Shown: positions 7,229-42,360 of the stretch, in pieces
Position numbering within the stretch: the stretch's first letter is position 1
Layout of the letters: each line of letters starts with the position of its first letter
NCBI RefSeq assembly: GCF_963921235.1
Contig: NC_086098.1
Location: forward strand, 235,910,001-235,974,000
DNA from: Mobula hypostoma
Taxonomy: Eukaryota
Reading direction: 5' to 3'
DNA: 64,000 nt
Made by a program: the position numbers and the translations under genes
The notes under the pieces: generated by a model
Databases searched by the model: none
The model's input: only the letters and a program-made list of their open reading frames with translations
Told to the model about the DNA's origin: nothing

Positions 7229-7426
7229 NNNNNNNNNNNNNNNNNNNNNNNNNNNNNNNNNNNNNNNNNNNNNNNNNNNNNNNNNNNNNNNNNNNNNNNN
7301 NNNNNNNNNNNNNNNNNNNNNNNNNNNNNNNNNNNNNNNNNNNNNNNNNNNNNNNNNNNNNNNNNNNNNNNNNNNNNNNNNNNNNNNNNNNNNNNNNNNN
7401 NNNNNNNNNNNNNNNNNNNNNNNNNN
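7229..7426. other. Assembly gap (198 N)
   Basis: Run of N. Confidence 1.
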
Positions 7427-16790: not shown

Positions 16791-17119
16791 TCACTGCGCA
16801 CAGGCGGACGAAGAGATGGTGTTTCGCAGTGGCGAGCTCAGCGAGCTGTGGCTCACGCTGCAGGAATAACTCGAGCCCTTGTTCCAGGCAGCGGTGGTTA
16901 CTCGCAGGTAACTGCTCAGCCTGTAGGTCTGGTCGGTGTCCGTGGACACGGCGCTTGTCATCACACCACTGTCCGTCTCCACGCCATCCACGTTCCAGCG
17001 CAGCGCGACCAAGCCCGGCTTAAAGCCGCTCACTAGGCAGGATAGAGTGGCAATACCCGAGCCGGTCTCATCGGGAGAGGGAGGGAGCAAGTGAATCGAG
17101 GGCTTTCTGCTCTCGCTAC
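16791..17119 (-). CDS. Ig light chain constant exon (type I / sigma-cart, NS5-like)
   Basis: Acceptor cacacag at 17121-17120; (S)SESRKPSIHLLPPSPDETGSGIATLSCLVSGFKPGLVALRWNVDG...YRLSSYLRV...WNKGSSYSCSVSHSSLSSPLRNTISSSACAQ*; C1-set Cys/Trp/Cys and terminal interchain Cys intact; phase 1 matches the J donor. Confidence 0.97.
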
Positions 17120-17877
17120 CTGTGTGTGAGAAAGGCGATGGGAGGAGGAGGAAAATATCATCATTAGCCAGTGAATTTCCTAAAAAGCGCCACACACTGA
17201 CCGAGCTCCCGTCAAATTATGATCACAATGTACCAACTATACAGACAATCGGTGAAATCTTGGGTACACAGTGCGGGCATTCGACCCATCGACGGTCCCT
17301 TTCATGGAATCGTTGCCACCCCTCAGGTCTGGTACTGGTAGACTGTTGCCCACCCCTCAGGTCAGGTCTGGTAATTTTCACGCATTTGATACCGTCCCGG
17401 TGGTATTGTTCTCTTTGCTGTGGAAGGTATCTGAGGGATGAGGTGGGGTGGGGGAGGTTACGGGGTGGGGTGGAGTGATGAGCCTGGCAAATCCCCAAAT
17501 CTATATTCTATCCATTATGTGGTTTTGGATATTCCAGCTTTAGACGTTCATAGACGGGGGCGCCCCGGTATTGGAGTGGCAAGGTAGATATCGATATCTC
17601 GCCATCCAATAAGGCAGCACGAAGCGGCGAAGATACAGAAAGGGTCAGAGAGATGAGTGTTTTATCTGTATGTCATCTTCAATGTCCTTTATTATCCTTC
17701 ATTGTATTTGGCAATAATGACGCATTCTCTGTCACAAGCTAGGAAACGTTGACTTATCACGTATCATGCCTGTTAACACTAGTTTGAATGATTGACCTCT
17801 AATAAATTTAGGGTTGAGTGCGGGAGATGAGTTGGCGACAACTGGAATATGAGGACGGGATTTACGGATTAAAAGTT

Positions 17878-17915
17878 GGGACTTTCGAGTCGCTCTGCCT
17901 CGTGTGGGAAATTTC
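17878..17915 (+). promoter_or_regulatory. Pair of kB-like motifs in the J-C intron
   Basis: GGGACTTTCG (17878-17887) and GGGAAATTTC (17906-17915), each 9/10 to GGGRNWYYCC; function is inference. Confidence 0.3.
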
Positions 17916-18125
17916 AAAGGATGAACAAAACGTGGAAGCAATTCCCGACATTTAATAATCGTGTTCTCCCGAGGATCTGAATAGCCAAGGATGCCGAACT
18001 GAATGTGCAAATTCTGCCTTGAAGAGAGATCGATACTTCGGCCAGGATAGAGCCATCTAACAGCACGATTGAAATGGAGATTTCTTCGAAAGCCTAATTT
18101 GATATAAAACGAGAGGATTACTTAC

Positions 18126-18485
18126 TCTTTATCTCCAGAATCGTCCCCGGTCCGTAGAACCAACCAACACCACTTTCCCACACTCTGCAGTAATAGACGG
18201 CCGAGTCGCCGGGCTCCAAGCTGCAGATGGTCAGGATGTGACTGTTGGCGGAGGTGTCTCTGGACGGTTGAAAACGTTCGGTGATGCCGGGTCCTCTGTA
18301 AATGATATTACTCGTGGTATGACTAATCACCCCCTCCGGTCTCTTCCCGGGACAATGTCGGTCCCAAGCAAATGTGTAACTTGCAACGTTTCCGTTCTGT
18401 ATCCGGCACTCTAAACGGGCAGTCTGCCCCGCGGAGACAGGACCGGGCACTGGGGTCTGATTGAGGACTGGGACCGCCAGGATAC
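18126..18485 (-). CDS. Ig light chain germline-joined VJ exon (type I / sigma-cart)
   Basis: Acceptor cattacag (18487-18486), donor A|GTAAGT (18125); (G)ILAVPVLNQTP...LECRIQNGNVASYTFAWDRHCPGKRPEGV...RFQPSRDTSANSHILTICSLEPGDSAVYYCRVWESGVGWFYGPGTILEIK; one 360-nt open exon, no heptamer/nonamer between V and J. Confidence 0.97.
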
Positions 18486-18633
18486 CTGTAATGAGACACA
18501 ATAAAACTACCAGGTGACTTGCAGCCACCAGAACTGCTATCAATCGCTGAAGACTCTCAGAAAACTGGCTTTCAAAGTTTCAACGAATTTCTTTTTTGCG
18601 GATAATTCGTGCGTTAACTAACCCGCCGCTCAC

Positions 18634-18682
18634 CTGGTAAATGGACCATTAGAGCCCACAGGAGATGCAGAACCGGGGACAT
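18634..18682 (-). CDS. Ig light chain leader exon MSPVLHLLWALMVHLP(G)
   Basis: ATG at 18682-18680, 49 nt, donor CAG|GTGAG, phase 1 matches the VJ exon; 148-nt intron. Confidence 0.93.
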
Positions 18683-18730
18683 TCCTTCAGTCAGCGAACG
18701 TCCTAACATCCAACCGAACTGTTCGCTACT

Positions 18731-18857
18731 ATGCAAACACCGGGAGCGTCTCCGGTTCCAGTGTCTGCAAACTGGACGCTCCGGACTCTTTATTAACCGG
18801 GGATGTTAATGAGTGGGAGGGGGCAGAGGCAGGATGGGGGCGGAGACTGACCACCTG
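18731..18857 (-). promoter_or_regulatory. IgL promoter: variant octamer GTTTGCAT (18738-18731), GTTTGCAG (18772-18765), E-box CAGGTG (18857-18852)
   Basis: Motifs 49-175 nt upstream of the ATG; the region is homologous to the pseudogene upstream region 41380-41570. Confidence 0.6.
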
Positions 18858-27274: not shown

Positions 27275-27415
27275 NNNNNNNNNNNNNNNNNNNNNNNNNN
27301 NNNNNNNNNNNNNNNNNNNNNNNNNNNNNNNNNNNNNNNNNNNNNNNNNNNNNNNNNNNNNNNNNNNNNNNNNNNNNNNNNNNNNNNNNNNNNNNNNNNN
27401 NNNNNNNNNNNNNNN
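27275..27415. other. Assembly gap (141 N) at the position of the copy-A microsatellite
   Basis: Run of N; right flank aligns to sequence just after 1300. Confidence 0.95.
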
Positions 27416-41844: not shown

Positions 41845-41893
41845 ATGTCCCCAGCACTGCATCCGCTGTGGGCTCTGCTGGTCCGTTTACCAG
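41845..41893 (+). pseudogene. Leader exon of IgL pseudogene MSPALHPLWALLVRLP
   Basis: 49 nt, ATG and CAG|GTGAG intact, homologous to 18682-18634. Confidence 0.9.
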
Positions 41894-42039
41894 GTGAGAG
41901 TCAGGTTGGTTCAAGTACAGATTATCCGCAATGAAATTCGTTGAACTTTTCATTCATGCTGATTTTCAGCGTCTTTAGCAACGGATCACACTCCTGTTGG
42001 CTCCAAGTCACCCGTTGGTGTTATTGTGTTTTATTGCAG

Positions 42040-42360
42040 ATATCCTAGCGGCTCCAGTCTTCAGTCAGACCCCACGGGACAGACCGTCCGCTCAGAGTGT
42101 CAGAAATGTTGGAAGTTACCGCATGGACCGCTACCAACAGCGTCACGGAGAGGGGTAATAGTGGGGTTCAGATTACGCACTGAGCTGATAATATTATTGC
42201 GGTGGACTGGGATTACAAACCATTCCCAACCGTCGAGAGAAGCCACCAGCGACAGTCACATCGGCATATTGGAGCCCTGACAAATACCAGCGTCACTGCG
42301 TAACGTGGGATAAACCGGTGAGTATGATCCTCGGTCCGGGTGCAATTTGAGATATAAAGA
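42040..42360 (+). pseudogene. Germline-joined VJ pseudo-exon (type I / sigma-cart IgL)
   Basis: Acceptor ttattgcag; DILAAPVFSQTP then deletions, frameshifts and stops; SQPSREATSDSHI; HCVTWDKPVSMILGPGAI*DIK; donor degraded to GCAAGT; no C exon recognised downstream. Confidence 0.9.

What the first reader, a model, noticed from the sequence alone, without database searches (positions are those of the whole stretch)
18126..18485. VH-pairing interface rewired and two extra cysteines in an otherwise open VJ
The core Cys-Trp-Cys is intact, but FR2 reads WDRHCPGKRPEG where light chains of this class typically have about WYRQRPGxxPEW. In Kabat terms this is Y36D (GAC), Q38H (CAT), R39C (TGT) and W46G (GGG); the J motif is YGPG instead of FGxG, and FR3 has LTICSL. 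Positions 36, 38, 46 and 98 are established VH-VL contacts, and each FR2/J change is one nucleotide from the presumed ancestral codon. Meanwhile the ORF, splice sites and C exon are clean. Inference: either early pseudogenisation, or an invariant light chain adapted to a non-canonical partner, homodimer or extra disulfide (surrogate-light-chain-like).
Basis: partly seen in the sequence, partly recalled or inferred. Interest (0 to 1): 0.72.

Follow-up and report, generated by a model that had tools for sequence, protein, structure and literature searches.

The report
Ray light-chain lineage with rewired interface
This is an intact, pre-joined antibody light-chain gene of the devil ray, and its odd heavy-chain-contact residues are the conserved hallmark of a whole sub-lineage of such genes shared by devil rays and stingrays, not decay; only the two extra cysteines are special to this copy.

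Summary
Window 18126-18485 (minus strand) is the germline-joined VJ exon of a leader/VJ/C light-chain gene of the sigma-2 class (also called sigma-cart or type I). The gene is identical to Mobula hypostoma XP_062888002.1.

The FR2 changes D36, H38 and G46 and the J change Y98 are not private. Fifteen genes carry them, from M. hypostoma, M. birostris, Hemitrygon akajei and Hypanus sabinus. Further fixed changes are E42K/R, A89R/K, W96 and F97.

These genes form one clade (support 100/97). The clade survives removal of the trait columns. A sister clade shows an intermediate state (D36, C39, Y98 with Q38 and W46 kept).

Within the clade the frameworks differ three times less than the CDRs (0.12 against 0.39), as in ordinary ray sigma-2 genes. 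The constant domain and its C-terminal cysteine are normal. An RNA-like contig from the same species encodes this FR2.

So the rewiring is an old, selected trait of a multi-gene, CDR-diverse light-chain lineage. It is neither early pseudogenisation nor an invariant surrogate chain. Whether it imposes a special heavy-chain partner is untested.

- **Cys39:** a CpG transition (CGT to TGT), also present in the closest Hemitrygon gene and in the sister clade.
- **Cys76:** recurs only in one dubious Hypanus gene model.

Transcription of this particular copy was not shown. An unchecked scan note (s1-143435) reports the same four replacements 30 kb before this window.

The parts
18634..18682 (-). Leader exon from the second in-frame ATG (MSPVLHLLWALMVHLP, phase-1 donor cag|gtgagc). 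NCBI's model starts 27 bases upstream, at the ATG at 18707-18709.
   Evidence: The splice gives an open 245-codon frame. tblastn of P0031 residues 1-26 hits 18709-18632.
18486..18633 (-). Intron 1 (gt...ag).
   Evidence: The RNA-like runs have no depth here, while DNA run X5 covers it.
18126..18485 (-). Germline-joined VJ exon: the last residues of the signal peptide, FR1 to FR4, with no RSS or V-J gap.
   Evidence: Pfam V-set, E 7e-12. 87% identical to a Hemitrygon sigma-2 protein.
18331..18366 (-). FR2 hallmark stretch W35-D36-R-H38-C39-P-G-K42-R-P-E-G46. Codons: D36 18361-18363, H38 18355-18357, C39 18352-18354, K42 18343-18345, G46 18331-18333.
   Evidence: Kabat mapping. Clade-wide conservation.
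18223..18225 (-). Cys76 codon TGC in FR3 (LTI-C-SL), directly after strand E.
   Evidence: Among the 15 clade genes it is shared only with Hypanus P0036.
18145..18186 (-). CDR3 and J: R89 (18184-18186), W96 (18160-18162), F97, and the motif Y98-G-P-G (18145-18156).
   Evidence: In the clade R/K89 is in 13 of 15 genes, W96 in 14 of 15 and Y98 in 15 of 15.
17120..18125 (-). J-C intron, 1006 bases.
   Evidence: An RNA-like contig shows a joint that skips exactly 1006 bases, with ends equal to GT..AG on the minus strand (table 5).
16791..17119 (-). Constant-domain exon (C1-set). It ends ...SSACAQ followed by TGA, so the cysteine that links light chains to the heavy chain is kept.
   Evidence: Pfam C1-set, E 6e-23. 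100% identical to P0031.

Best explanation
The gene is a member of a conserved sub-lineage of germline-joined sigma-2 (sigma-cart, type I) immunoglobulin light-chain genes. I call this sub-lineage the D36/H38/G46/Y98 clade. So far it is seen only in Myliobatiformes (devil rays and stingrays).

In this clade one contiguous patch of the sheet that faces VH has been re-patterned and then frozen. The fixed changes are Y36D, Q38H, E42K/R, W46G, A89R/K, W96, I97F and F98Y.

Shown:
- The clade is monophyletic and predates the split of Myliobatidae and Dasyatidae.
- Its frameworks are under at least as much constraint as those of canonical paralogs, while its CDRs vary.
- It keeps a normal constant domain and the C-terminal cysteine.
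- A transcript-like contig of this FR2 type exists in the same species.

Inferred:
- The protein still works as a heavy-chain-linked light chain.
- The changes compensate one another inside the domain. An acid at 36 pairs with a base at 89. The tyrosine hydroxyl moves from residue 36 to residue 98. The tryptophan lost at 46 is replaced in space by W96.
- The domain therefore stays folded but offers VH a different surface, with a different packing geometry or pairing preference.

The two extra cysteines are later events in this copy. R39C is a CpG transition that has recurred or been kept in this clade and its sister. G76C is rare. They are most likely tolerated surface thiols or a recent blemish, not the purpose of the gene.
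For: Gene identity:
- It is 100% identical to M. hypostoma XP_062888002.1.
- It has V-set and C1-set domains.
- An AF2 model at pLDDT 91 matches ordinary lambda light chains.

The clade:
- 15 proteins from 4 species carry the hallmark.
- Clade support is 100/97. The sister clade, with an intermediate state, joins at 99/84.
- The clade is still at SH-aLRT 96 after the 10 trait columns are dropped.
- On a tree of the C domain alone, all the nearest relatives of the window gene are clade members.

Constraint:
- Framework against CDR pairwise difference is 0.122 against 0.393 in the clade, and 0.167 against 0.401 in canonical ray genes.
- The window gene against Hemitrygon P0030 is 95% identical in the frameworks, 74% in the CDRs and 88% in C.
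- Interface positions vary less than in canonical genes: H38 15 of 15, Y98 15 of 15, G46 14 of 15, W96 14 of 15.
- The window copy is not an outlier, with 2 private framework changes.

Expression: RNA-like runs cover the exons only and show the J-C splice. One contig encodes ...SYAFGWDRHRPGKRPEGVISH.

In-window contrast: a second sigma-2 VJ at about 41846-42355 is visibly dead, with stops and deletions.

Literature:
- Skate type I genes are all germline-joined, number at least 89 clusters, vary mostly in the CDRs and are expressed (PMC2192082).
Against: - No nucleotide sequences of orthologs could be fetched, so no dN/dS was computed. Constraint is inferred from proteins only.
- In two RNA-like runs of the species, the only contig over codon 39 reads CGT (Arg) and differs from the window at 11 of 162 bases. 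It comes from a paralog, so transcription of this copy itself is not shown.
- This copy has 7 cysteines and the most private substitutions in the C domain of the 15 genes (6). That fits some relaxation.
- Two other clade members look damaged. P0036 lacks Cys23. P0034 has H36, E46 and a changed J motif. The lineage therefore does shed members.
- The compensation network (D36 with R89, W96 for W46) rests on strand register recalled from known VL structures. No coordinates of the model were available.
- The co-occurrence of these residues is one phylogenetic event, not repeated covariation.
- Absence of the clade from skates, sawfish, Narcine and sharks rests on few annotated proteins.
Confidence: 0.65

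Rival explanations
1. Pairing-restricted light chains. The re-patterned face, including the charge reversal at residue 42 and the acid at 36, is matched by complementary changes in one lineage of ray heavy-chain V domains. These light chains would then pair preferentially or only with that partner, forming a natural orthogonal VH-VL interface. This extends rather than contradicts the best explanation.
For: - The changes sit on classical VH-contact positions and are frozen across species.
- The stepwise series canonical, then sister clade, then this clade looks like directed remodelling.
- There is a precedent. The nurse shark germline-joined sigma-2 chain is the preferred partner of the germline-joined IgM1gj heavy chain (PMC5192425).
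Against:
- The aromatic content of the face is kept (Y87, Y98, W96, F97). An ordinary VH may therefore still fit.
- Position 46 is already variable among canonical ray sigma-2 genes (W, Y, R, E, L).
Confidence: 0.25
2. This particular copy is silent or newly disabled. The lineage is functional, but the window gene has picked up two unpaired cysteines and is drifting out of use, even though its frame is still open.
For: - There are seven cysteines in the mature chain, against five in most relatives.
- Cys76 is otherwise found only in P0036, which lacks Cys23.
- At codon 39 both RNA-like runs of the species show only the Arg paralog.
- The copy has the most private C-domain substitutions in the clade.
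- A dead sigma-2 gene lies 23 kb away.
Against: - The frame, all splice sites, Cys23, Trp35, Cys88, the C-domain cysteines and the C-terminal cysteine are intact.
- The terminal branch is not long: 0.08-0.11 against a median of 0.10-0.12.
- Cys39 is shared with the closest Hemitrygon gene and is conserved in both members of the sister clade.
- Contigs drop rare variants, so absence from them is weak evidence.
Confidence: 0.3
3. Extra intradomain disulfide. Cys39 and Cys76 both lie at the CDR-distal end of the V domain and bond to each other. This would give the domain a second staple, and the total cysteine count would then be fully paired apart from the heavy-chain link.
For: - In the AF2 model each cysteine is the first residue after its strand. 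Strand C ends at mature residue 40 and Cys is at 41. Strand E ends at 83 and Cys is at 84.
- Strands C and E face each other across the sandwich in V domains (established fold knowledge).
- Two gains in one gene give an even pairing.
Against: - The two cysteines do not travel together. P0030, P0007 and P0025 have Cys39 alone. P0036 has Cys76 alone.
- The usual sheet-to-sheet distance of about 10 A is too long for a disulfide unless the loops move.
- No coordinates were available to measure the distance.
Confidence: 0.15
4. Autonomous or self-pairing V domain, or a surrogate-like invariant chain. The interface changes would stop VH pairing, as the camelid VHH hallmark residues do on the heavy-chain side. 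The chain would then act alone, as a homodimer, or as a stand-in during B-cell development.
For: - Two changed positions (L36, L46) are the structural counterparts of VHH hallmark positions H37 and H47, and W46G mirrors W47G (established knowledge).
- The genes are germline-joined, so each has a fixed CDR3.
Against: - The face is not made hydrophilic overall.
- The C domain and the heavy-chain-linking cysteine are kept in all members.
- The lineage has many members with CDR1 and CDR2 diversity, unlike an invariant surrogate.
- There is no VpreB-type or lambda5-type unique tail, and V, J and C are in one chain.
Confidence: 0.06

Closest known systems
Skate type I (sigma-2, sigma-cart) germline-joined light-chain clusters (Leucoraja/Raja erinacea; Anderson et al. 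1995, PMC2192082)
   Same: - Same isotype: P0010 is 68% identical in V, and the window gene falls inside the sigma-2 tree.
- Same leader/VJ/C mini-cluster with V and J fused in the germline.
- Many genes, with differences concentrated in the CDRs.
   Different: The skate genes seen here keep the canonical WYRQRPG..PxW FR2 and an FGxG/FSPG-type J. The ray clade has D36, H38, K/R42, G46, R89, W96 and Y98 fixed.
Nurse shark germline-joined sigma-2 (NS5) light chain, the preferred partner of IgM1gj (review PMC5192425)
   Same: A germline-joined light chain of the same isotype for which a preferential heavy-chain partner is reported. This is the best precedent for pairing specialisation.
   Different: It is a single gene tied to a neonatal heavy chain in a shark. 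I did not compare its interface residues. The ray clade is a multi-gene family and no partner is known.
Camelid VHH hallmark substitutions (V37F/Y, G44E, L45R, W47G)
   Same: A fixed set of FR2 changes on the VH-VL face, including loss of the tryptophan at the equivalent position (L46 corresponds to H47) and a change at L36, which corresponds to H37.
   Different: - VHH changes make the face hydrophilic and go with loss of CH1 and of the light chain.
- Here the aromatic content is kept and the constant domain and linking cysteine are intact.
Surrogate light chain (VpreB plus lambda5)
   Same: An invariant, non-rearranging, light-chain-like product that pairs with heavy chains.
   Different: - It is a two-polypeptide system with unique tails, and VpreB lacks the J strand.
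- It is reported absent from fish (PMC5192425).
- The window gene is a complete one-chain V-J-C and belongs to a CDR-diverse family.
Rabbit kappa K1 extra disulfide (Cys80 in V to Cys171 in C)
   Same: A natural light chain with an additional cysteine in the E-F region at the CDR-distal end of the V domain.
   Different: The rabbit partner cysteine is in the C domain. The window gene's C domain has no extra cysteine, and here the second extra cysteine is in FR2. This comparison is recalled from memory and was not tested.

Membership tests
Sigma-2 (sigma-cart, type I) immunoglobulin light chain | One V-set domain with a J strand, followed by one C1-set domain. | tested here: met
   Pfam V-set E 7e-12 and C1-set E 6e-23. 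The 245-residue spliced product is shown.
Sigma-2 (sigma-cart, type I) immunoglobulin light chain | Groups with named type I chains, not with sigma, kappa or lambda. | tested here: met
   - Leucoraja 'type I immunoglobulin light chain' P0010 and Heterodontus chains are among the hits.
- Horn shark sigma P0070 is only 36-38% identical and serves as the outgroup.
- Kappa and lambda were not put in the tree.
Sigma-2 (sigma-cart, type I) immunoglobulin light chain | Cysteine near the C-terminus for the bond to the heavy chain. | tested here: met
   The C exon ends ...SSACAQ. The same ending is found in the relatives.
Batoid germline-joined light-chain cluster | V and J contiguous in genomic DNA, with no RSS or spacer. 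| tested here: met
   A single open exon runs from 18485 to 18126 through CDR3 into YGPGTILEIK and then a splice donor. The window is a genome assembly. The tissue of origin is not known to me.
D36/H38/G46/Y98 clade (defined here) | D/E36, H38, K/R42, G46, R/K89, W96 and Y98 together. | tested here: met
   All seven are present in the window gene. The gene lies inside the clade, with support 100/97.
Processed or decaying pseudogene | Stops, frameshifts, lost splice sites, or lost Cys23, Trp35 or Cys88. | tested here: not met
   None is present. Compare the dead copy at 41846-42355.
Processed or decaying pseudogene | No transcript of this copy. | tested here: inconclusive
   RNA-like contigs cover the exons, but the one over FR2 belongs to a paralog.
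Surrogate light chain (VpreB / lambda5) | Split into a V-like chain without a J strand and a J-C chain, each with a unique non-Ig tail, and invariant. | tested here: not met
   One chain carries V, J and C and has no extra tail. The family has 15 members with variable CDRs.
VHH-like autonomous V domain | Hydrophilic replacement of the partner-facing residues together with loss of the domain that holds the partner chain. | tested here: not met
   Y87, Y98, W96 and F97 keep the face aromatic. The C domain and linking cysteine are kept. Solubility as a lone domain cannot be tested with these tools.

The most novel reading that the evidence does not exclude
Stingrays and devil rays keep two non-interchangeable sets of sigma-2 light chains. 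The D36/H38/G46/Y98 set would carry a natural 'orthogonal' VH-VL interface that directs it to a matching set of heavy-chain clusters. The recurrent Cys39 of this clade and its sister might even bond to that partner. This would be a germline-encoded solution to heavy/light pairing in an immune system built from many separate mini-clusters.
Probability: 0.25. Interest if true: 0.7.

Novelty: new variant of a known kind. Interest (0 to 1): 0.45.

Why it matters
The VL residues that touch VH (36, 38, 44, 46, 87, 98) are among the most conserved in all antibody light chains. Engineers change them on purpose to force or forbid chain pairing.

Here nature has changed four of the six, plus 42, 89 and 96, and has then kept the new set in many genes and across two ray families.

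That makes three questions directly testable:
- How far the VH-VL interface can be rebuilt and still work.
- Whether cartilaginous fish, which have dozens of separate heavy-chain and light-chain clusters, use built-in pairing preferences.
- Whether the rebuilt face could serve as a natural template for orthogonal Fab designs.

For genome annotation, these genes are labelled 'lambda-1 light chain-like' but are sigma-2.

Tried and rejected
- **Ortholog DNA for dN/dS:** The look-up of encoding contigs for P0003 and P0001 returned gene positions but no DNA, because the records are whole chromosomes. I made no further look-ups of that kind.
- **Cross-species substitution counts from reads:** the DNA run of a related species (X5) tiles the introns at 3.4-4.2% difference. 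It has a hole over FR2, and one of its pieces looks paralogous (intron 1 at about 9.5%). I did not compute a ratio.
- **Copy-specific expression:** Logan contigs of a multigene family are short and partly chimeric. The J-C bridging contig matches the window at 116 of 118 bases in VJ but differs at 28 of 278 in C. It cannot be assigned to this copy.
- **Cys39-Cys76 distance:** the structure tool returns no coordinates, and no structure files exist in the sandbox.
- **Complex prediction:** not run. No heavy-chain sequence was available. A homodimer pass would not discriminate, because ordinary light chains also dimerise.
- **Lineage-level pseudogenisation:** rejected.
- **Surrogate light chain:** rejected.
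- **Literature:** I found no description of this FR2 type in the searchable library. Many immunogenetics papers are not in it.

Full report
**What is there**

On the minus strand the window holds a compact three-exon light-chain gene:
- Leader exon 18634-18682. An in-frame ATG lies 27 bases further upstream, at 18707-18709.
- A 148-base intron.
- A VJ exon, 18126-18485.
- A 1006-base intron.
- A constant exon, 16791-17119, ending in TGA.

All splice sites are standard, and the three exons join into 245 codons without a stop. The VJ exon runs without interruption from FR1 through CDR3 into YGPGTILEIK and a splice donor, so V and J are fused in the genome. Pfam finds a V-set and a C1-set domain. 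The finding's coordinates are the exact exon boundaries.

- FR2 reads W-D-R-H-C-P-G-K-R-P-E-G.
- FR3 reads L-T-I-C-S-L.
- The J motif is Y-G-P-G.
- HMMER alignments to solved human lambda and kappa chains place these residues at Kabat 36, 38, 39, 46, 76 and 98.
- Among 35 canonical proteins of the same isotype from rays, skates and sharks, Y36 occurs in 32, Q38 in 34, W46 in 27 and F98 in 28.

**Identity**

The best matches are stingray and devil-ray proteins that NCBI names 'lambda-1 light chain-like'. The named references in the same family are the little skate 'type I' light chain and horn shark chains. The isotype is therefore sigma-2, formerly sigma-cart or type I.

The spliced product is 100% identical to Mobula hypostoma XP_062888002.1. 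That model simply starts at the upstream ATG. Earlier notes of this scan also name the genome as a devil ray.

**The interface changes are a lineage trait**

Fifteen proteins carry D/E36, H38 and Y98, nearly all with G46:
- M. hypostoma: two (this gene and XP_062887973.1)
- M. birostris: one
- Hemitrygon akajei: eight
- Hypanus sabinus: four

On a maximum-likelihood tree they form one clade (ultrafast bootstrap 100, SH-aLRT 97). Its sister, at 99/84, is a pair of genes from Hemitrygon and Hypanus with an intermediate state: D36, C39, K89 and Y98, but Q38 and W46 kept.

The clade survives when the ten trait columns are removed (SH-aLRT 96). On a tree of the C domain alone, the nearest relatives of the window gene are all clade members. 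It is therefore a whole-gene lineage and not a converted patch.

Mobula belongs to Myliobatidae, and Hemitrygon and Hypanus to Dasyatidae. Inside the clade there are Hemitrygon/Hypanus sister pairs. The lineage therefore predates the split of these families and had already diversified before the two stingray genera parted.

No such gene appeared among the few annotated proteins of skates, sawfish, Narcine or sharks. That is weak evidence of absence.

Against canonical ray genes, the clade differs at the following positions.

| Position | Clade | Canonical ray genes |
|---|---|---|
| 42 | K or R in 15 of 15 | E in 17 of 20 |
| 89 | R or K in 13 of 15 | A or G |
| 96 | W in 14 of 15 | Hypervariable |
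| 97 | F | I |

There are also small changes in FR3 and FR4. Positions 36, 38, 46, 89, 96 and 98 all belong to the classical list of VL residues that contact VH (Chothia and colleagues, recalled from memory). A review in the library states that the minimal set of eight VL interface residues is conserved between kappa and lambda, and that L46K in a VL abolished the function of one antibody (PMC6963682).

**Selection**

- Within the clade, pairwise differences are 0.122 per site in the frameworks and 0.393 in the CDRs.
- Canonical ray genes give 0.167 and 0.401.
- The window gene and its closest relative, Hemitrygon P0030, are 95% identical in the frameworks, 74% in the CDRs and 88% in the C domain.
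- The interface positions vary less in the clade than in canonical genes.

This is the pattern of working V genes and is the opposite of decay. It is also the pattern reported for skate type I clusters, which are all germline-joined, number at least 89, vary mostly in the CDRs and are expressed (PMC2192082).

A true pseudogene of the same isotype lies in the window for comparison. At about 41846-42355 on the plus strand there is a leader and a VJ remnant with deletions, a lost Trp35 and stop codons.

**Expression**

Two RNA-like runs of the same species cover only the exons, with no depth over either intron. One contig shows the J-C joint that skips exactly the 1006-base intron.

The only contig over FR2 (18318-18479) differs from the window at 11 of 162 bases. 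Applying the nine differences that one search lists gives ...SYAFGWDRHRPGKRPEGVISH. That is a clade-type FR2 with Arg39, so it comes from a paralog that is neither of the two annotated M. hypostoma genes.

The lineage is therefore transcribed and spliced, but transcription of this copy itself is not shown. A run of another species also holds exon-only contigs at 90% identity or more, one of them with a CDR3 two codons shorter. An unchecked scan note (s1-143435) reports two V domains with the same four replacements 30 kb before this window. That fits a local group of such genes, apart from the main sigma-2 arrays noted 1-2 Mb beyond the window's end.

**How it probably works**

The constant domain is ordinary and the C-terminal cysteine is kept in every member. 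The AF2 model is confident (pLDDT 91) and matches ordinary lambda chains. The protein should therefore still be tied to a heavy chain through CL and CH1.

The next points are inference from the usual register of the G-F-C-C' sheet, not from coordinates:
- The changed residues form two adjacent rows, 98-87-36-46 and 96-89-34.
- The acid at 36 appears together with a base at 89. The sister clade has D36 with K89, and the main clade D36 with R89.
- The tyrosine hydroxyl moves from 36 to 98.
- The tryptophan lost at 46 reappears at 96.

I read this as a set of changes that compensate one another. They keep the domain packed but give VH a different surface.

Whether that surface only shifts the packing geometry or restricts the choice of partner cannot be told without heavy-chain sequences. 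The nurse shark offers a precedent for restriction: its germline-joined sigma-2 chain is the preferred partner of IgM1gj (PMC5192425).

**The two cysteines**

*Cys39:*
- It is TGT where the expressed paralog has CGT, that is, a CpG transition.
- It is also present in the closest Hemitrygon gene (P0030) and in both sister-clade genes.
- It is absent from all 35 canonical proteins, although the dead canonical copy in the window also has CGT at that codon.
- In this group it is therefore either tolerated or wanted.

*Cys76:*
- It recurs only in Hypanus P0036, a model that lacks Cys23 and has a read-through tail.

In the model, each cysteine is the first residue after strand C or strand E, at the end of the domain far from the CDRs. 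A bond between them is conceivable. However, the two do not co-occur in other genes, and I could not measure the distance.

With 7 cysteines and the most private C-domain changes of the clade, this copy may be somewhat relaxed. Its branch is not long, however.

**Verdict**

But it is a property of an old multi-gene lineage. It is not a sign of decay and not an invariant surrogate-like chain.

The architecture (a germline-joined sigma-2 cluster) is well known. I did not find the conserved re-patterned interface described in the searchable literature.

Noticed in passing
window 41846-42355 (+): A dead germline-joined sigma-2 gene of the canonical type. It has a leader exon (MSPALHPLWALLVRLPG), an intron, and then a VJ remnant with internal deletions, a lost Trp35, in-frame stops (TAATAG) and a broken J (GPGAI*DIK). 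No C exon was found after it.
   Followed up: partly
window 18683-18709 (-): An in-frame upstream ATG adds MLGRSLTEG before the usual start. The same nine residues are identical in 8 clade proteins from Mobula, Hemitrygon and Hypanus, and NCBI's models use this start. It is unclear whether it is a translated extension of the signal peptide or a conserved 5' leader. A near-octamer GTTTGCAT lies just upstream, at about 18726-18733.
   Followed up: partly
proteins P0007 (Hemitrygon) and P0025 (Hypanus): A sister clade with an intermediate interface: D36, C39, Q42, K89 and Y98, but Q38 and W46 kept. Cys39 is conserved in both species. P0025 lacks the J region in its gene model.
   Followed up: partly
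RNA-like runs X9 and X12 laid on window 18318-18479: A transcript-like contig of a third clade-type gene of the same species (CDR1 SYAFG, Arg39). It matches neither annotated M. hypostoma protein of the clade.
   Followed up: partly
protein P0036 (Hypanus sabinus): A clade member with Ser in place of Cys23, an extra Cys in CDR1, Cys76 and a long read-through tail after the C domain. It is probably a decaying gene or a faulty gene model. P0034 (Hemitrygon) has H36, E46 and YGPV in J.
   Followed up: no
window 18459-18467 (-), FR1: An N-Q-T sequon (VLNQTP) near the start of FR1 is common across the whole sigma-2 family (N in 24 of 35 proteins, Q in all, T in 26 of 35). It is a possible conserved glycosylation site, although it is followed by proline.
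   Followed up: no
window 7229-7426 and 27275-27415: Two runs of N (198 and 141 bases).
   Followed up: no
database annotation: All ray sigma-2 genes found are auto-named 'immunoglobulin lambda-1 light chain-like' (one is named 'kappa'). This hides the isotype.
   Followed up: no
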